Source of the DNA: Perna viridis
Lineage: Eukaryota
Direction of reading: 5' to 3'
Assembly (NCBI GenBank): GCA_037379345.1
Contig: CM074515.1
Coordinates: forward strand, 21,514,001 to 21,578,000
DNA: 64,000 nucleotides
Shown: in pieces, positions 18,534 to 53,047 of the stretch
Numbering within the stretch: the first letter of the stretch is position 1
Layout: the number at the start of each line of letters is the position of its first letter
Program-made: the position numbers and the translations under genes
The notes under the pieces: model-generated
The model's input: the letters and a program-made list of their open reading frames with translations, nothing else
Told to the model about the DNA's origin: nothing
The model's database searches: none

Positions 18534-18710
18534 CCACAGTAATAGGCATGTAGATTCCTTTGTAAACTGTCCATGTATCATCATTCAGTTGCCAAGCCAC
18601 AGTAATGGGCTTGTTGATTCCTTCTGTCTGTCTGTGTATCATCATTCAGTTGCTCAGCTACAGTAATGAGCATTCTGCCTGTCTGTCTGTCTGTCTGTCA
18701 TCATTGAGGT
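18534..18710. repeat. ~62-bp degenerate tandem repeat x2.5 ending in (CTGT)n
   Basis: acagtaat.ggc..gattcc..tgtatcatcattcagttgc recurs. Confidence 0.75.
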
Positions 18711-19192: not shown

Positions 19193-19288
19193 TACATGTG
19201 CATTGTATATAGTAGAGTTTTGTCTACATGTGCATTGTATATAGTAGAGTTTTGTGTACATGTGCATTGTATCTAGTACAGTTTTGTC
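19193..19288. repeat. 32-bp tandem repeat x3
   Basis: tacatgtgcattgtatatagtagagttttgtc at 19193, 19225 and 19257. Confidence 0.95.
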
Positions 19289-19724
19289 GGTAAGTAAATG
19301 CATGATTTGATGTACTTCAACAACAAATATTGTTGTAACTCCTTAGTAAAAGCTATATTTTATTTGGTACATTTTCATTCACTAAAGGCAAAAAAAATAT
19401 AGGTAGGCTTGAGTTCTTGTTCATGACCACATATGTACCAAAGTATTGCATTTTTATTATCACCCTTTTTTTATTACAAAATATAAGCATTTTTTCAGTC
19501 TATCTGGTTTGATAAATGGGTCAATAGATGGATAAAAAACCATAGCAATTATTGGTATTTTAAGAACATACTAAGAGCAATTTACATACACATGATTTTT
19601 TTTCTTCAGAAAAATAAAATTATCTTCCCTCCTAATTGCAGGGTATCATTATCTCATGGACAGTTTCACCCTTTTCTTTTAATTTTTCCCTTGATTATCT
19701 TTCTCATGCAGACACCTCTTTCTT

Positions 19725-20193
19725 GGTACCAGTATCGCATTGCATATTACTGAGCAGGTTTATGTCAAAACATGGATGCTATAAAAATATAGTGCATTTT
19801 CTTTTTGCCCCTCTACAAACTAATGTTATGTCAAAAGATATGTACAATGACATATAAAATAGAGCAAACATCACACTATAAGATGACAAACTTTTTTAAA
19901 AGAAAATCTAACGTAATGACATAAAAATGTTCATCTGAAAAGGTTGGTTTGATGAGTGCAAAACAAAAGTGAAAGTAGAGAAAATGGCTATTTATAGTTC
20001 AAGACTACTTTTCTGTCCGATCTTTGTGGACTCACCCTATTTTCTTTGCGGGAAATTATTTTTTCACATGTCCTTAGAAATGCTGCATTAGTGAAAGTTT
20101 TATTGAATCAATTTACATATTTTTTTTTAAAAATCCTTAAAATATGCACTTCACTTTAGAAGTCTATGGGAAAATTAATATGATACTGAGACC
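19725..20193. mobile_element. Solo copy of the 468-bp TIR module (more diverged copy)
   Basis: Same sequence family and same GGTACC...GAGACC termini, with its own 4-bp TSD TCTT (19721-19724 and 20194-20197). Confidence 0.9.
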
Positions 20194-20322
20194 TCTTATC
20201 AGGATATCTCAGGATATACAAGGATTATATCCCCTGCCAGTAAATGGCTTGGTTAATTGTCTCATGGACATCCCCTTTCTTTAAATGCTTCCCTTGATTA
20301 TATACCCAGAAACCTCTCTCCT

Positions 20323-22511
20323 GGTACCAGTATCGTATTGCATATCCCTGAGCAGGTGTACGTCAAAACATGGATGCTATAAAAATATAGTGCATTTTCT
20401 TTTTGCCTCTCTACAAACTAATATTTTGTCAAAAGATATGAACAATGACTTATAAAATAGAGCAAACATCACACTGTAAGATGAAGAACTTTTTTAAAAG
20501 AAAATCTAACATAATATCATAAAAATGTTCCACTGAAAAGGTTGGTTTGATGAGTACAAAACGAAAGTGAAAGTAGGGAAAATGGCTATTTATAGTTCGA
20601 GACTACTTTTCTGTCCGATCTTCGTGGACTCACCCTATTTTCTTTGCGGGAAATTATTTTTTCACATGTCCTTAGAAATGCTTCATAAGTGAAAGTTTTA
20701 TTGAATCAATTTACATATTTTTTAAAAAATCCTAAAAATATGCACTTCACTATAGAAGTCTATGGGAAAATTAATACGATACTGAGACCTAGTAAGCCAG
20801 TTTTTCAAGTAAAGTTGGATATTCAGCAAGTGGTTTTTACCAGCTGAAAAAGTAGTACCCCAATGCAGGTAACACTTTTAAGATGAATTAGCCAACTTTT
20901 GAACCTGATTTTTTATGGTAGCTCTGGTTTTTTGCATTTATGGTTAATCTTTACCATATTTGGAAATGCATTTTGTTTTCATGAATTTGTATAATATCAG
21001 TTCAATAAAATTATTATCTTGACTGTTTATGATGAGCATATCTATATTCATGTAACCTAAAGCAAGTAATACTCCTGCATAAAGGATAGTTTTCAAGTTA
21101 CAACACATTTTAAGTATGTGGTTAGGACTTGAAAATAGTCATTTTCCATACATTGCCTCTTATATATGAAAAAATGAATATTTTTTTTATTTTTTGTTTT
21201 TCTTTCAAATAAATAGCTAAAATGAGTTGCCATATAACTGTGTGGTTGATTTAAACACAGAAATGGCACAAAAGTCAACAGCCAATTTTTTAGTGGACTT
21301 TTTTTAGTGGTTCAAATGGACAGATTCTAATGCGGCAAGAAAAATAAAGGTGTTTTTTCATATAAAAACTGATTTTTTTCAAAAAGTATCTAAAGCAGAC
21401 AGTTGTTATTATAATATTTATACCAATAAACTATTTTTCTTGCATCATAGCTATCTGTTTTAAAGAAAAAGTCCTTTTCCTGTCATATTGAGGTCCTTTT
21501 GTATCTGCCTGGGGTACCAAAATGGCTTAAAATCTGTATTTTCTGCATATGAAAAGCTATATTTTTTTAAAACTATGATATTGGTATAATTTTTTTTGGA
21601 TTTATTATAATTGAAATGACCATATCTATAGTTTAAAACAGTTGGTTGTACCAGTCATTATACTTTACTTTAAACAAGAGGCTCCCTTGAGTTAAAGACA
21701 AAAAAGGAGGTTCGAATATTAATATTTCCATATATGGAAATCACAAGTGGGGATTAAATAATGATTTGGAACTCATAGTACAGCTCATGTATCTACCATG
21801 TCAGAATAAACCACAAATTTGCTTAGCTTGACTAATGCAGCAGCTTTTTATCAAAAGTAATATTTTCTGGCTAACACTGAGATATTAGTCTCATGCCTGG
21901 AATAGGGTACCTGTATAAAAATTTTAATAGAAAACTCATGTTTATAGCAGGGCAATGATGTTCTGAATTTTCAGTATGAAAATGAATAATCTAGCAGAAA
22001 AACAACAACTTTTATGATTATATTTAAATGTTTATTAGTAATAGGTACCAGTATCGTATTGCATATCCCTGAGCAGGTGTACGTCAAAACATGGATGCTA
22101 TAAAAATATAGTGCATTTTCTTTTTGCCTCTCTACAAACTAATATTTTGTCAAAAGATATGAACAATGACTTATAAAATAGAGCAAACATCACACTGTAA
22201 GATGAAGAACTTTTTTTAAAAGAAAATCTAACATAATATCATAAAAATGTTCCACTGAAAAGGTTGGTTTGGTGAGTGCAAAACGAAAGTGAAAGTAGGG
22301 AAAATGGCTATTTATAGTTCGAGACTACTTGTCTGTCCGATCTTCGTGGACTCACCCTATTTTCTTTGCGGGAAATTATTTTTTCACATGTCCTTAGAAA
22401 TGCTACATAAGTGAAAGTTTTATTGAATCAATTTACATATTTTTTTAAAAATCCTAAAAATATGCACTTCACTATAGAAGTCTATGGGAAAATTAATATG
22501 ATACTGAGACC
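20323..22511. mobile_element. Non-autonomous composite DNA transposon: two ~468-bp terminal direct repeats (20323-20789, 22044-22511) flanking a 1254-bp non-coding internal region; KolobokP-like architecture
   Basis: The two repeats are nearly identical and in direct orientation. Each has 17-bp imperfect TIRs (GGTACCAGTATCGTATT...AATAYGATACTGAGACC). A 4-bp TSD TCCT is present only at the outer ends (20319-20322 and 22512-22515); the inner flanks (TAGT, AATA) do not match it. Confidence 0.85.
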
Positions 22512-25004
22512 TCCTATCAGGATATCTCTGGATACAAAGATTATCTCCCCTCCCAGTGGCTTAGGTCATTTTCTCATAGACATCCTTGTCTTTTGATGCC
22601 TACCTTGATTATTATTCCCAGACAGTTCTCTCCTATCAGGATATATCAGTTTGTACAAGATAGATCATTATAAAGGGAGATAAGTGTTATCAATGGACTT
22701 GTTTATTATGATAGATTCTTATTTTATTGTCAAAAAAGCTCAAAATCTGTGTGAAAACATTTCACTGTGTTAATTTAAGAAAGTGGATTGGAAACTTTAC
22801 AAACTTAACTGAATGTTAACTTTTTGCTCGTTACTTACTTTAAATACTTCAAAATTTGTGATATGTTGGTAAGAAATTGGTTTTTCTACAAAAACTGTCA
22901 TCACATCCTAAGTTTAAAAATTTTTTTCTGCATTATATGAATTACAGGCTAAATTTTAGGCATTACATCCTGGTAAAATCCAAAACACACCCCAAATGAC
23001 TGACTTAAGAAATTATTGTTTTCATTGTTTACCCTGAGATATGGGACACAAAACAAAGTGAGATGTGGACTTGCCCTCAGCTTTATTTTTAGAATCTCTG
23101 AAACTTTTTCAGATTAAAATATGTTAAAGAAATCTTTTTGGTCCAAAATAAAAATACAAAATGTAAGGCACACTTCTTCAACAGAAATAAAAAGCTTCAA
23201 GGAGTGCAGCATGGTACGACTGTAGTAATCAAGCTCTGAACAGTTGGGGACCCAATATTAGTTTTCGATTTTTTGGACTGTGGTCCTTCATAACTCAAAA
23301 AACACCAAGTAATATCTGAAATCAGATTGATAAACACAGGCAGGATATTTTCATTAGGAATCCAATTGAAAAAAGTTTTTGAAAGCAGACTTTTTAGTGT
23401 ATTCCCTTTGAACTTTAAAACAATCCATAAGGCATCAAATTTGATAATTTGTTTACCAGAATTAATATGGAACAAAATAAATAGAAAAACAAAAATCAAA
23501 AGAAAAATAAACATTCTACATGGGTTTCAATACAACACCTATTTTAACCCTTTTTGGCGCCTTATTCTAAAACGATGGGGGCCACAAACTCCAAATTATA
23601 TCGTAACCTGCCGATATTGGCAAGTAAAATCGTTTAAAAATTCGTAACAGTTTTGTCTACCACAACAAAAGCTATCACACAAAGACCAAGTGACTATTGA
23701 CTACAAGGAAACCAAGAGCACCATACCAATAAACAGCTGCAATTTTTTTGCAGTGGTATAAATATGTGTATTTAAAAGATTGCATTATCAACAAAAAAAG
23801 TTGAGAATAAGTTTTACTCTGTAAAAATGAATAGACACTACTGTGACATCACAATTTTCATGTGAAAATATTTTAATTTAATTGAAAATGAGGTAGACTC
23901 TTGGTAGTTTTAAAATGCACAATTAAGTTACCTCCACATGCAAGTATGAAAAAGAGACTTCACATGTATCTTTTAAACCTACAAAGAAGCAAATGTTCTG
24001 AAAAATTTCTCCTTGATAAAAGCATGTGGAGATATATAAATCTGCAACTTGCAGTACTGATTCAAATGTCTTTTAAAAAAAAATGTTTTAACTTCTAAAG
24101 AATTTCAATGTAAGAGTGCATGCTAGATTTTATGTCATAATAATCATATCATTGAATGTAAAATTGGATTAATTCCCAGGTATAAAAGTGGGTGTACTTG
24201 AAATTACATCTTCATTTTTCAGATTTAATTTTTGTTCTTCTTCACATTTTAAGGCTTATATCACTTAGCTTGAGTTACTGCAAATTTTGAAATAATCAAT
24301 TTTGGATTTTTATATGAGTGTACAGAGAATTTATCTTGATATGGTAAAAATTGAAATGGCATTTTGGTGAAAATTAACAAACTAGCGATGATTTTCTCAT
24401 TTACAGTAAGTAACAAATTTTCTGCTGTTATATATTTTACATGGAGAGGTTGTGAAACCATTAAATTTTTTATACTCCAACCCAGTTATGTTTTATGATT
24501 ACACCCTCTCCCCACAAAGTTCAGGGAGTGTGTATGATCAATCACCCTGTCTGTCTGTCTGTACATCTATTTGTCCATGACTCTCATAAGTACAACTCCG
24601 CCAGCACTCCACAGTTTAGTTTAGTTTCACACTTTTGGCCAGGGATAAAAAATGACATAAATGGAAACCGGTGGTTGTTATAGTGATTAAAAATGAAGAA
24701 TTTATTGTTGATAAAACATTTTCTGAAAAAGGGGACTTTTAAAAGTATTTTGCAATGTTTTATATATTTTCAATGTTGAAGGGGCTTTTTTTCAATGACA
24801 GTTTGACTTCATTGTGAAAGTGAAAATAAGTCAATTTTTTACCATGTTAAATTTAATAAGTGGATTACAGAGTGAAATAGCTCAAAATCTAACCCGCGAT
24901 GCCCATATGAGGAAGGGGTTTTCGAAGGAAAAAGTTTCAGGGGATGAAATAAAAATTTAAGATATTTTGTGGATAATCTGATATTTTTAAACCTGATTTT
25001 ATTC

Positions 25005-49894: not shown

Positions 49895-51485
49895 GTGAGT
49901 TCTCCTAACTATATCTTTTTTCTCTTGTTTTCATGTGCTTGTGATGACTTTAATCTGTATAATTGGTTAAAACCTTTTTTTCTTATGATGCAAATTCTGA
50001 TGTTTTCCTCACTTGAGGAATTTAATTAAAAAAAAATTAATTGACCTAAATTGGTAAAAATGATATATAATACAAATTGTCATATTTGAAAGGGATCCAG
50101 GAAATTTTGTACTCCCTGAAGTCAACCAAAACACGAATCCTTAAGTGTCAGTCCCTGTAAATATCAGGCAGTAGGTACGAAAAATACCCATCATTTTGAT
50201 AGTGTAATTTGACTATTTGCACCATCAGAATCAAGGAAAACAGACAAGATTTTCCATATCATGCTGGACCATTGAGTTACAATTTCATTGAAATGCACTG
50301 AAAATGAACATTTCAAGGGCAGATAACTCTGTCAAAAACCTCATTTTTCTAAGATTCTATTGAAAAATTTCTGAGCAAAGCCAGTGATGCAGAGATCAAA
50401 TAATGGTCTTTTCAGAAGGAGAAAGTATCCTTGAGTAATATTACATTGTCAGATTGGTGGGTTTTTGACATGATGTTTCTGATTTTCCCCATTTGCCTGA
50501 TTCTTACAAATACTTACACTTAAAGGGCATACAATTCTCACATGGTGCAAACTTTATTTTTATCTTTTATCAAAAAATGGTGTATTGTGTGTGGTGAATA
50601 TGAAATGACTTTGTCATTAGTGGAATTGTATACCATAATTTTATTCACTTTCTTGAGTCCTAATATTTGCAGTATCAGTAAAATGGCTATATTGCGGCTA
50701 CTGTTTTTCATTGTTAAGATGGCATGTTTTATTAAAGGATGAGAAATAAATTTTGCATTTTGTATTTTTCACACTACAAACTTTAAACATAGTATAAAAT
50801 ATGTGTATTACAAAAAGTACTATTTTTTAGTATTTTACAGGGAAACAATATATATTGTGACTAGAAAGTAATGAACATTTATAAAAATCAAAATCCTAAA
50901 TAGACATTTCTATTCCAGATTAGTAAATAGAGCATTGCGTTTCAGGTCATTATTTTTTCTGAGTTACAAATTTAGGAAAGATTGGTGAACAAACCAAAAT
51001 ATTGCATTGTAAATCTCAAAACTTGTTTAGGTAAAATACCTTTTTATCGTCCAAACTACTGGTGTGCTTTCATTGTTATTAATCCAAAATATTTTTGTGA
51101 CACTTGTTTCTATCAATGGCTGGTTACTATCAAATATAAGAACCACTATACTCATATTTTATAGTAACTGGCCATTGATAGAAACAAGTGCTACATGGGC
51201 CAACCTAATAATGACTTTCTTATTGTATTGCATTGATGTGCATAGTTTTAATTTGATCAGAGTTAAGGTCAGTCAAAAGTCAAAAGCTTTATTTAAAGTC
51301 AGTACTCTTAAAACAAAAACCAAAGATCAACTTCTGTTATTGTATGCTTGTTTTTGTATTTAACTACATGTTTCCATCCATCTTAATGTTTCAAAGGCAC
51401 ACTTCCCTGAAAATAATTTGAGTTATCTTCCTTTACACAAAGCGCATTGTTTCTACTAGAGTTGTCTCCCTTGGTTTATTGATAA

Positions 51486-51953
51486 GGTACCAGTATCGTA
51501 TTGCATATCCCTGAGCGGGTGTACGTCAAAACATGGATGCCATAAAAATATAGTGCATTTTCTTTTTGCCTCTCTACAAACTAATGTTTTGTCAAAAGAC
51601 ATGAACAATGACTTAAAAAATAGAGCAAACATCACACTGTAAGATGAAGAACTTTTTTAAAAGAAAATCTAACATAATATCATAAAAATGTTCCACTGAA
51701 AAGGTTGGTTTGGTGAGTGCAAAACGAAAGTGAAAGTAGGGAAAATGGCTATTTATAGTTCAAGACTACTTTTCTGTCCAATCTTCGTGGACTCACCCTA
51801 TTTTCTTTGCGGGAAATTATTTTTTCACATGTCCTTAGAAATGCTACATAAGTGAAAGTTTTATTGAATCAATTTACATATTTTTTTTAAAAATCCTAAA
51901 AATATGCACTTCACTATAGAAGTCTATGGGAAAATTAATACGATACTGAGACC
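51486..51953. mobile_element. Solo copy of the 468-bp TIR module
   Basis: Near-identical to 22044-22511, with its own 4-bp TSD ATAA (51482-51485 and 51954-51957). Confidence 0.92.
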
Positions 51954-53047
51954 ATAACTGTTACCTAGATCAATTTGCTACCTTTTAACAAGTAATCCAA
52001 GACAAATATTTGGTACATTTGTATTACCATTACTTATCAGCCATCACTAAATTGTAAATAAACAACCTGCTAATCCCTTGGTAGATCAGTGGTCATTTAA
52101 AAACCAATCAAGCAAAAATTATTAGATCGGGTCCTGATAGGATATTGGGGAAGAGAAAGTCATTTCACCCTGCTGATTAATTTTAAATATGTGAGGGGTT
52201 GTTGGAGGGTCAGGAAGGGAGGGGATATTTCCATTTACAGAAGTCATTTTAGAGTATCTTATATGACCTATATATTGTTTATCACATTTTAGCTCCACAA
52301 AATACAACTTAATTTCCATATTTCCTTTTGATTCTTTCAAAGCCCAGTTAACAAGTTTTCTTGAAGCTTGAAGGAGTGAACTGTAAAAAGATGGTAACAA
52401 TAGGTCTTTTGAAAATTATATGCTGCAGAAGGTAGAGATATTAGTGCATATTTATCTTAAGATCTTAATTTAAAAGGTCATAGAATGTAGTTCAGAATAA
52501 ATTGAAGTGAATGATGCTGTTTATAATTTGAGAAGTTGTACTTCCGTAGGTTTGCAGAGTTAATGGGCAAGCTGTTTCCAATCAAGAATCTTGAAGACCT
52601 TAATTGTTTGCAAAGAAATGCATCTTTTTTTTAATTTCATGCAGCTTGCTCAGTCAGAAAAATTGTAATTAAAAAGGGGAGGTTAATTGAAATAATACTT
52701 GAATTAGCTGTTAATCTGTGATGTTACTACGATGAGTTTGAGTGTCTGGTAGAGAGAGAGGGTCTGTAAAAGAGGTTAATTATATATTAATTATAGGGAG
52801 ATCAAACTTAAACAGACTTTCTCTTCTTGTTTATGTAACATAAATATAATGGCTTCCTAAAGAACAAGTAGAGCTGTGATGTATAACAGATTATTTTAAT
52901 GTGTCAGAAGCTGGAATTAAGGTTGTTTGAATCCAATACATCATAATCTGCAGTGGCAAAAAAGTTTTTGTTTTCTCTAATACTCTGATTTGGCCTTGCC
53001 TGGAAAATTTGATGGCTTGGTTTGGCCTGAACAATTTTTTCTCTTCA

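What the first reader, a model, noticed from the sequence alone, without database searches (positions are those of the whole stretch)
20319..22515. Composite (bacterial Tn / LTR-like) DNA transposon built from two TIR-bounded 468-bp direct repeats
Seen: two near-identical 468-bp modules in direct orientation, each with its own 17-bp TIRs, enclose 1254 bp. A single 4-bp TSD (TCCT) lies at the outer ends only, so the whole 2.19 kb appears to have inserted as one unit. Solo modules at 19725 and 51486 carry their own TSDs (TCTT, ATAA). The termini are GG..CC rather than TG..CA, and I see no PBS or PPT, which argues against an LTR retroelement. Known: the KolobokP lineage of bivalves has this layout (long terminal direct repeats of roughly 450 bp with short TIRs, plus solo copies). 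Inference: this is a non-autonomous member of KolobokP or of a parallel lineage. The three different non-TTAA TSDs are atypical for Kolobok, so it may be an undescribed family, or a MITE pair that mobilises captured host DNA.
Basis: partly seen in the sequence, partly recalled or inferred. Interest (0 to 1): 0.85.

Follow-up and report, generated by a model that had tools for sequence, protein, structure and literature searches.

The report
Non-autonomous KolobokP transposon copy
This is an ordinary, non-coding copy of a KolobokP-type jumping gene, a kind of DNA transposon described in bivalves in 2022. It belongs to a very abundant family (about 2,000 end-repeats in this mussel-type genome) that is not among the 228 families listed in that paper.

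Summary
Two direct repeats (20323-20789 and 22044-22511, 98.5% alike) each have 17-bp inverted ends. They enclose 1,254 bp and share one outer 4-bp duplication, TCCT. Solo repeats at 19725 and 51486 have their own duplications.

Genome-wide there are 1,970 repeat termini, 791 repeat-to-internal junctions and 279 internal-to-internal junctions. Of 28 insertion sites sampled, 25 have perfect 4-bp duplications. These include 9 of 10 monomers and a 27-kb array.

Every structural feature matches KolobokP (Kojima & Bao 2022, PMC9587614):
- terminal repeats of about 450 bp, GG..CC ends and 4-bp non-TTAA duplications
- solo repeats, multimers and excision footprints
- a subterminal motif at the same offset as in published oyster families

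The same genome holds coding KolobokP units. One transposase is nearly identical to a published Perna viridis KolobokP protein.

Not shown: I did not find a coding partner with this family's end-repeat. The family matches none of the paper's 228 consensus termini, so I call it a new member of a known kind.

Unchecked first-reader notes from other pieces of this genome (s1-774356, s1-774364) describe a similar layout.

The parts
20319..20322 (.). left copy of the 4-bp target-site duplication (TCCT) of the monomer
20323..20789 (-). LTDR B (467 bp). The minus strand is the published KolobokP orientation, inferred from the subterminal motif. Inverted ends lie at 20323-20339 and 20773-20789 (15/17).
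   Evidence: 99.2% mean identity to 29 dispersed copies
20760..20770 (-). subterminal motif TTTTCCCATAG, nt 20-30 from the LTDR end. Published KolobokP-9, -11DR and -N1_CGi LTDRs carry it at the same offset.
20790..22043 (-). internal region INT (1,254 bp, 29% G+C, non-coding)
22044..22511 (-). LTDR C (468 bp). Inverted ends lie at 22044-22060 and 22495-22511 (14/17). The motif lies at 22482-22492.
22512..22515 (.). right copy of the 4-bp target-site duplication (TCCT)
19725..20193 (-). older solo LTDR A (469 bp, 93% to the young copies). Its duplication TCTT lies at 19721-19724 and 20194-20197.
51486..51953 (-). solo LTDR D (468 bp, about 98% to the young copies). Its duplication ATAA lies at 51482-51485 and 51954-51957.
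22631..22634 (.). unoccupied homologous target (TCCT followed by ATCAGG) at the next local repeat-unit junction

Best explanation
Window 20319-22515 is one monomer (LTDR-INT-LTDR, 2,189 bp plus a 4-bp duplication) of a young, very abundant, non-coding family of KolobokP-type DNA transposons.

Inferred mechanism, following Kojima & Bao 2022:
- A KolobokP DDD/E transposase supplied in trans recognises the 17-bp inverted ends and the subterminal motif that each LTDR carries.
- Pairing the two ends of one LTDR moves a solo LTDR. Pairing the outermost ends moves the whole monomer.
- Integration makes a 4-bp staggered cut at a loosely defined W-N-N-W target.
- Unequal crossover between LTDRs, possibly provoked by the family's His-Me nuclease acting in trans, then expands monomers in place into (LTDR-INT)n arrays.
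- Excision of an inner LTDR leaves INT-INT joints that lack 5 nt.

Shown here: the anatomy, the copy forms, the duplications, the footprints, and the presence of coding KolobokP units in this genome.

Inferred, not shown: which transposase moves this family, and the role of the nuclease.
For: Anatomy.

Family size (pattern counts, reversed-pattern controls all 0):
- 1,970 LTDR termini
- 791 LTDR-to-INT junctions
- 279 INT-INT junctions

Copy forms in fetched loci: solo LTDRs, monomers, arrays of period 1,721 and INT-INT of period 1,249.

Target duplications:
- 25 of 28 sites have a perfect 4-bp duplication. These include 9 of 10 monomers and the two ends of a 27.5-kb array on C10.
- Positions 1 and 4 of the duplication are always A or T (P about 6e-9 at 68% A+T).

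Excision footprints: L019 is LTDR-INT with the second LTDR gone. It lacks the same 5 nt as the INT-INT joints.

Literature match (PMC9587614):
- LTDR about 450 bp with inverted ends of 11-18 bp (up to 25 in Table S1)
- 5'-RR..YY-3' termini and 4-bp duplications
- solo LTDRs and (LTDR-INT)n multimers flanked by duplications
- micro-deletions at INT-INT joints

Sequence link: TTTTCCCATAG occurs 11 times in one orientation and 0 times in the other in the paper's sequence file. In three oyster LTDRs it lies at nt 20-30 from the end, exactly as here.

Coding KolobokP in the same genome:
- PF05551 gives at least 574 candidates, many in arrays of 3.97-4.43 kb period.
- L061 has a 680-aa transposase (PF20700, 3e-59) and, on the opposite strand, a His-Me ORF (PF05551; I-PpoI, E about 1e-3).
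- That transposase is nearly identical to 'KolobokP-101_PeVi_1p' in the paper's alignment.
Against: - I did not find a coding element bounded by this family's LTDR. On C1, none of the 100 exact termini listed is paired at 3.5-5 kb. None of the roughly 175 LTDR positions I had lies within a few kb of a listed His-Me hit in the expected orientation.
- INT shows no trace of transposase or nuclease coding sequence.
- L061's own LTDR has no DNA similarity to this one and lacks the motif.
- The family's termini match none of the 228 published consensus sequences.
- Superfamily membership therefore rests on architecture plus one short conserved motif, not on a transposase.
Confidence: 0.88

Rival explanations
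1. The family is KolobokP, but this particular monomer did not insert as one unit. A circular LTDR-INT molecule, or repair templated on another copy, converted a resident solo LTDR at this site into LTDR-INT-LTDR. This is model 5b1 of Kojima & Bao, and it leaves the old 4-bp duplication in place.
For: The published model predicts unchanged duplications. B and C each carry private differences from the family core, 2-3 in B and 4 in C. An older solo LTDR (A) sits at the same nucleotide of the neighbouring repeat unit, so LTDR insertions at this kind of site did occur.
Against: Nine of ten other monomers at unrelated sites have their own perfect duplications. Unit transposition explains that most simply. 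Both B and C are about 99% identical to the young core, so neither looks like an old resident copy. The sequence alone cannot separate the two routes.
Confidence: 0.15
2. This is an independent, convergent composite element: a 468-bp MITE of some other DNA-transposon superfamily that happens to bracket a repeated 1.25-kb segment. It would be unrelated to Kolobok.
For: No coding partner was found, and no similarity to any published KolobokP consensus terminus. Several superfamilies make 4-bp duplications (my own knowledge).
Against: It would have to reproduce by chance the LTDR length class, the RR..YY termini, the multimers flanked by duplications and the one-sided excision footprints. It would also have to carry the TTTTCCCATAG motif at nt 20-30, as published KolobokP LTDRs do. 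The genome is full of coding KolobokP units.
Confidence: 0.06
3. This is a non-autonomous LTR retrotransposon (TRIM/LARD-like). Solo LTRs would arise by LTR-LTR recombination and tandem arrays by unequal crossover or template switching.
For: Direct terminal repeats, solo copies, tandem arrays that share a repeat, and 4-bp duplications all occur in LTR elements. The paper itself draws the TRIM analogy.
Against: The termini are GG..CC with 17-bp inverted ends, not TG..CA. There is no primer-binding-site-like TGG and no polypurine tract next to the repeats in either orientation. Rfam gives no tRNA-like or other RNA match. LTDR-INT and INT-INT forms with a fixed 5-nt loss indicate DNA-level excision of one repeat, which retroelements do not do. 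The two repeats of this monomer are each closer to copies at other loci than to each other.
Confidence: 0.02

Closest known systems
Non-autonomous KolobokP families (for example KolobokP-N5_CGi at 1,738 bp, KolobokP-4N1_OwFu at 1,729 bp with a 469-bp LTDR, KolobokP-4N1_CorFlu); Kojima & Bao 2022, PMC9587614
   Same: LTDR-INT-LTDR layout, LTDR in the ~450-bp class, inverted ends of about 17 bp, GG..CC termini and 4-bp duplications. Solo LTDRs outnumber monomers. There are multimers flanked by duplications, INT-INT joints with micro-deletion and LTDR-INT forms. On C1 the ratio of solo to monomer to multimer is about 56:16:4, against 290:90:24 for KolobokP-4N1_CorFlu.
   Different: The sequence is new. 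10-mers from this family's inverted ends and 17 nt of the INT start have no exact match in the paper's sequence file of 228 consensus families. The paper lists only three families, all autonomous, for Perna viridis. The joint loses 5 nt, where the paper reports mostly 3-4 nt. The arrays are very large: runs of junction hits span about 110 kb on C3 and over 80 kb on C2.
Autonomous KolobokP (for example KolobokP-1 to -3_PeVi; L061 in this genome)
   Same: Same genome, same architecture class and the same tendency to form arrays.
   Different: [quoted passage not shown] L061 has no DNA similarity to this LTDR or INT.
Canonical Kolobok transposons
   Same: 5'-RR..YY-3' termini and a 4-bp duplication.
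   Different: Canonical Kolobok duplicates TTAA specifically and has plain inverted ends. Here the target is only W-N-N-W (one TTAA among 25), and the ends are long direct repeats.
TRIM/LARD non-autonomous LTR retrotransposons
   Same: Direct terminal repeats, solo repeats and tandem arrays that share a repeat.
   Different: No PBS or PPT, long inverted ends on each repeat, DNA excision footprints, and no TG..CA termini.
Bacterial composite transposons with direct-repeat IS elements (IS26-type pseudo-compound transposons)
   Same: Two independently mobile end modules bracket a passenger segment, and the whole unit moves with one duplication.
   Different: These end modules encode no transposase. 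This is a eukaryotic element whose enzyme is supplied in trans.

Membership tests
KolobokP (Kolobok superfamily) | LTDR-INT-LTDR: an internal region between two long terminal direct repeats | tested here: met
   467/468-bp repeats at 98.5% identity around 1,254 bp
KolobokP (Kolobok superfamily) | LTDR length in the ~450-bp or ~660-bp class | tested here: met
   467-469 bp here; published ~450-class families range from 445 to 480 bp
KolobokP (Kolobok superfamily) | Each LTDR has its own short inverted ends, and the termini are 5'-RR..YY-3' | tested here: met
   17-bp ends at 15/17, GG..CC termini; criterion
KolobokP (Kolobok superfamily) | Target-site duplication of 3-5 bp (4 bp in most ~450-bp families) without strict sequence | tested here: met
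   25 of 28 sites have a perfect 4-bp duplication of varied sequence, W at positions 1 and 4; Table S1
KolobokP (Kolobok superfamily) | Solo LTDRs and (LTDR-INT)n-LTDR multimers, both flanked by duplications | tested here: met
   14 of 16 distinct solo LTDR sites have a perfect 4-bp duplication. The 27.5-kb C10 array is flanked by TTTA.
KolobokP (Kolobok superfamily) | Signs of LTDR excision: INT-INT joints and LTDR-INT forms with loss of a few flanking bases | tested here: met
   279 INT-INT joints and one LTDR-INT copy (L019), all lacking 5 nt
KolobokP (Kolobok superfamily) | Sequence relationship of the LTDR to LTDRs of established KolobokP families | tested here: inconclusive
   Only a short link: TTTTCCCATAG at nt 20-30 from the end, as in KolobokP-9, -11DR and -N1_CGi, and a similar motif further in on KolobokP-1_PeVi. 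No long alignment was possible without typing the published sequences.
KolobokP (Kolobok superfamily) | [quoted passage not shown] | tested here: inconclusive
   Coding KolobokP units exist in this genome, but I found none bounded by this LTDR. The search was limited to top-scoring hits and the first 100 pattern rows.
LTR retrotransposon (TRIM/LARD) | TG..CA termini, a primer-binding site after the 5' LTR and a polypurine tract before the 3' LTR | tested here: not met
   GG..CC termini. INT starts TAGTAAGCC and ends TTAGTAATA, with no TGG or purine run in either orientation. No RNA family match.
Canonical Kolobok | TTAA-specific duplication | tested here: not met
   1 of 25 duplications is TTAA

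The most novel reading that the evidence does not exclude
The same 5-nt loss appears at all 279 INT-INT joints and at an independent LTDR-INT copy. This would mean KolobokP excision cuts at a fixed offset outside one particular LTDR end, an asymmetric copy-out or cut-out step. A family with no nuclease gene still builds arrays of about 100 kb, so the His-Me nuclease either acts in trans on a site kept in this 1.7-kb unit or is not needed for multimerisation. Two insertions of different age at the same nucleotide of adjacent diverged local repeats would further suggest that target choice reads more than the 4-bp W-N-N-W.
Probability: 0.25. Interest if true: 0.45.

Novelty: new member of a known kind. 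Interest (0 to 1): 0.27.

Why it matters
The finding mostly confirms a published picture. KolobokP elements behave as eukaryotic composite-like transposons whose end-repeats move alone, whose monomers move as units, and which expand into satellites.

The family adds a large, young, well-assembled data set: about 2.3 Mb, or 0.3% of the genome. It has about 1,970 LTDRs, about 1,070 INTs and arrays of 27-110 kb. With it one could test the published models of LTDR excision and of nuclease-induced unequal crossover. It also shows how a 1.25-kb transposon interior turns into a satellite.

For annotation, this family should be masked as KolobokP-N rather than as an LTR element or a satellite.

Tried and rejected
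- **Coding partner with this LTDR, not found.**
  - DNA searches with LTDR B and the older LTDR A scored only the best 40 of about 1,400-1,500 candidates.
  - A pair 2,835 bp apart (L062) proved to be a segmental duplication of a solo LTDR with its flanks.
  - A motif-anchored pattern that excludes this family found 36 sites. Most are a GGTTTC-terminus variant of this same family. One relative (L073) is an old 410-bp solo LTDR, 73% identical, with duplication TCAT.
  - A 41-aa LTDR ORF is not on record in the public gene index.
- **Coding remnants in INT.** tblastn of the L061 proteins against INT found nothing (best E 0.2).
- **Match to published consensus sequences.** 10-13-mers of the inverted ends and the INT start gave no hit in the paper's supplements. 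I did not align published LTDRs in full, because that would have meant typing long sequence.
- **L061's LTDR.** It is not that of KolobokP-1 or -2_PeVi.
- **Empty allele.** Contigs of four public runs (three studies) carry the outer junctions (left flank into A, and C into the right flank), and one run (X11) spans A, unit U2 and the start of B. No listed contig skips the element. Contigs cannot show absence, so polymorphism remains untested.
- **Local 125-bp repeat as a genome-wide target.** Rejected: it is locus-specific, and only the two junctions in this window exist.
- **Earlier findings.** The search by sequence was blank.
- I recomputed the duplication table from references instead.
- **Genome-letter allowance.** Only small fetches were possible afterwards.
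Full report
**1. The observation**

- LTDR B is 20323-20789 (467 bp), INT is 20790-22043 (1,254 bp) and LTDR C is 22044-22511 (468 bp).
- B and C are 98.5% identical: six substitutions and one extra T.
- Each repeat starts GGTACCAGTATCGTATT and ends with its near reverse complement (15/17 in B, 14/17 in C).
- TCCT flanks the whole unit at 20319-20322 and 22512-22515. The inner flanks, AATA and TAGT, are not a duplication.
- Solo copies lie at 19725-20193 (TCTT on both sides) and 51486-51953 (ATAA on both sides).
- The 23-nt terminus occurs four times in the window against zero expected.
- The unit has no ORF above 61 aa and no Rfam match.

**2. It is a family, not a local accident**

In the window's genome (723 Mb; window = C5:21,514,001-21,578,000) I counted three junction types by pattern. 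All reversed-pattern controls were 0.
- LTDR terminus: 1,970 occurrences.
- LTDR-to-INT junction: 791.
- INT-to-INT junction: 279.

That makes about 1,070 INT copies and roughly 2.3 Mb of DNA.

The 60 loci first fetched show every form:
- solo LTDRs
- LTDR-INT-LTDR monomers
- (LTDR-INT)n arrays of period 1,721, for example 16 INT units (17 LTDRs) over 27.5 kb on C10 and at least 20 on C4
- INT-INT repeats of period 1,249

Later pattern lists show junction hits running over about 110 kb on C3, over 80 kb on C2, and a 60-kb array on C4 made mostly of INT alone.

On C1, where the list of exact termini covers the chromosome, about 56 solo LTDRs, 16 monomers and 4 dimers can be read off.

The sampled dispersed LTDRs are about 99.5% identical to each other. 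That sample is biased towards the best hits. B and C are about 99% identical to them, D about 98% and A about 93%.

**3. Target duplications**

I computed flanks from the loci and from nine 46-nt fetches at the far ends of monomers.
- 25 of 28 distinct sites have a perfect 4-bp duplication.
- These include 9 of 10 monomers, the two ends of the 27.5-kb C10 array (TTTA) and a rearranged dimer on C1 (TTAT).
- One site has a 3-bp duplication and two have none.
- The duplicated sequence varies, but positions 1 and 4 are always A or T (T19/A6 and A16/T9; P about 6e-9 at 68% A+T). This looks like a relaxed shadow of the TTAA of canonical Kolobok.
- I saw no wider consensus around the sites.

**4. Excision footprints**

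All INT-INT joints read alike and lack 5 nt compared with INT-end plus INT-start. The loss can be placed entirely on the INT side next to the GGTACC end of the missing LTDR. A shared TA allows 5+0, 4+1 or 3+2 placements.

L019 is an LTDR-INT copy whose second LTDR is gone. It shows the same 5-nt loss, with its duplication (TACT) still readable.

Contigs from four public runs break into many different sequences exactly at 20789/20790 and 22043/22044. These are the LTDR ends, as expected if the LTDR is itself the mobile unit (table 7).

**5. What it is**

Kojima & Bao (Mob DNA 2022, PMC9587614) describe KolobokP. Its published features are:
- an INT between two long terminal direct repeats of about 450 or about 660 bp
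- each repeat with short inverted ends (11-18 bp in the text, up to 25 in Table S1) and 5'-RR..YY-3' termini
- duplications of 3-5 bp, 4 bp in most ~450-bp families, with 'no strong target sequence specificity'
- abundant solo LTDRs
- (LTDR-INT)n-LTDR multimers flanked by duplications
- INT-INT joints with micro-deletions, and LTDR-INT forms in which 1-5 flanking bases are lost on one side

Non-autonomous families of 1.5-3.7 kb are common in that paper. Every one of these features is met here.

There is also a sequence link. The 11-mer TTTTCCCATAG occurs 11 times in the paper's sequence file, always in one orientation. In KolobokP-9, -11DR and -N1_CGi it lies at nt 20-30 of the LTDR. In all four LTDRs of this window it lies at nt 20-30 from the right-hand end on the minus strand. 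The element is therefore on the minus strand relative to the published orientation.

**6. The genome carries coding KolobokP**

The His-Me finger family PF05551 has at least 574 candidates, many in arrays of 3.97-4.43-kb period.
- One unit (L061) has a 680-aa ORF (PF20700, E 3e-59).
- On the opposite strand it has a 160-aa His-Me ORF (PF05551; I-PpoI in the PDB at E about 1e-3).
- Short peptides of the 680-aa protein hit the paper's transposase alignment. The passages returned for 'KolobokP-101_PeVi_1p' match the L061 translation almost residue for residue over several hundred positions.

The genome is therefore Perna viridis or a close relative. Other agents' unchecked notes call it mussel-type.

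The paper lists only three P. viridis families, all autonomous and with LTDRs of 452-461 bp. None of its 228 consensus sequences contains 10-mers of this family's ends.

**7. What is not shown**

I did not find a coding element bounded by this LTDR.
- The searches score only the best hits and list only the first 100 pattern rows.
- INT has no detectable coding remnant, and L061's LTDR is unrelated in sequence.

The enzyme that moves this family, and any role of the nuclease, are therefore inferred from the published model.

**8. Rivals**

- An LTR retroelement is very unlikely. It has the wrong termini, no PBS or PPT, long inverted ends and DNA-level excision footprints.
- A convergent, non-Kolobok composite is possible only if the shared motif and all the architectural details are coincidence.
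- A real open point is how this copy arose: unit transposition, or conversion of a resident solo LTDR by an LTDR-INT circle (the paper's model 5b1). The sequence cannot separate these two routes.

**9. Local context**

The element sits in a short local array of diverged ~125-bp units (U1-U3 are 70-78% identical; the next unit, U4, matches only over its first ~30 bp).
- The old solo LTDR A and the young monomer occupy the same nucleotide of two adjacent unit junctions. The third junction (22631-22634) is empty.
- The units are far more diverged than A is from B, so the insertions are independent and of different age.
- The unit is locus-specific, and no other LTDR in the genome has this flank.
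- Contigs of four runs carry the outer junctions, and none of those listed shows an empty allele.

**10. Verdict**

This is a clean, correctly read example of a lineage described in 2022. It is a new, very abundant non-autonomous family: a new member of a known kind, of modest interest.

Noticed in passing
window 19620-22650: An old solo LTDR (A) and the young monomer sit at exactly the same nucleotide of two adjacent, 70-78% diverged local ~125-bp repeat units. The third junction (TCCT at 22631-22634) is empty. The unit is locus-specific, and no other LTDR in the genome has this flank. This is either a local hot spot or a coincidence that is unlikely genome-wide.
   Followed up: partly
L072 (G000:C2:60516300-60518200); region C2:60.46-60.57 Mb: A 923-bp tandem repeat, 96% identical to the part of the L061 KolobokP unit that holds the His-Me nuclease gene. 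In the search table these units show open frames of 163 aa with no stops. The surrounding 105 kb mixes periods of about 920, 1,838 and 4,417 bp. It looks like a satellite that keeps only the nuclease gene.
   Followed up: partly
G000:C4:46.327-46.388 Mb; C3:9.935-10.045 Mb; C2:36.056-36.137 Mb: Very large arrays of this family. The C4 array is mostly INT-INT (period 1,249-1,253), so the transposon interior has become a 1.25-kb satellite there.
   Followed up: partly
L073 (G000:C1:45953900-45955450): An old 410-bp solo LTDR, 73% identical to this family. It has the same subterminal motif, terminus GGTATCAGT and its own 4-bp duplication TCAT. It is a singleton relative of the family.
   Followed up: yes
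G000:C7:1455033-1455063 and C9:10768791-10768820: Two places where one LTDR end abuts the next LTDR start, with only 8-9 nt between. Both spacers start with the first 4-5 nt of INT (TAGT/TAGTA). They may be products of INT loss or of excision. The C7 joint is also seen in contigs of two public runs.
   Followed up: partly
G000:C6:7.763-7.790 Mb: An array of a subfamily whose right-hand terminus reads GGTTTC instead of GGTCTC. Its periods alternate between about 1,720 and about 1,795 bp, which points to an INT variant about 73 bp longer.
   Followed up: no
L062 (G000:C13:16581900-16585450); L006/L007 (C9:12.931 and 12.940 Mb): Solo LTDRs duplicated together with their flanks (periods 2,835 bp and about 8.7 kb). 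These are segmental duplications, not transposition.
   Followed up: yes
L010/L065 (G000:C15:2635881-2638099): A monomer without a matching duplication (TATA against TAGT). The right flank again begins with the first 4 nt of INT, which suggests a multimer truncated by deletion.
   Followed up: no
window 18534-18705 and 19193-19288: Two small tandem repeats just upstream of the element: a 61-bp unit in 2.8 copies and a 32-bp unit in 3 copies.
   Followed up: no
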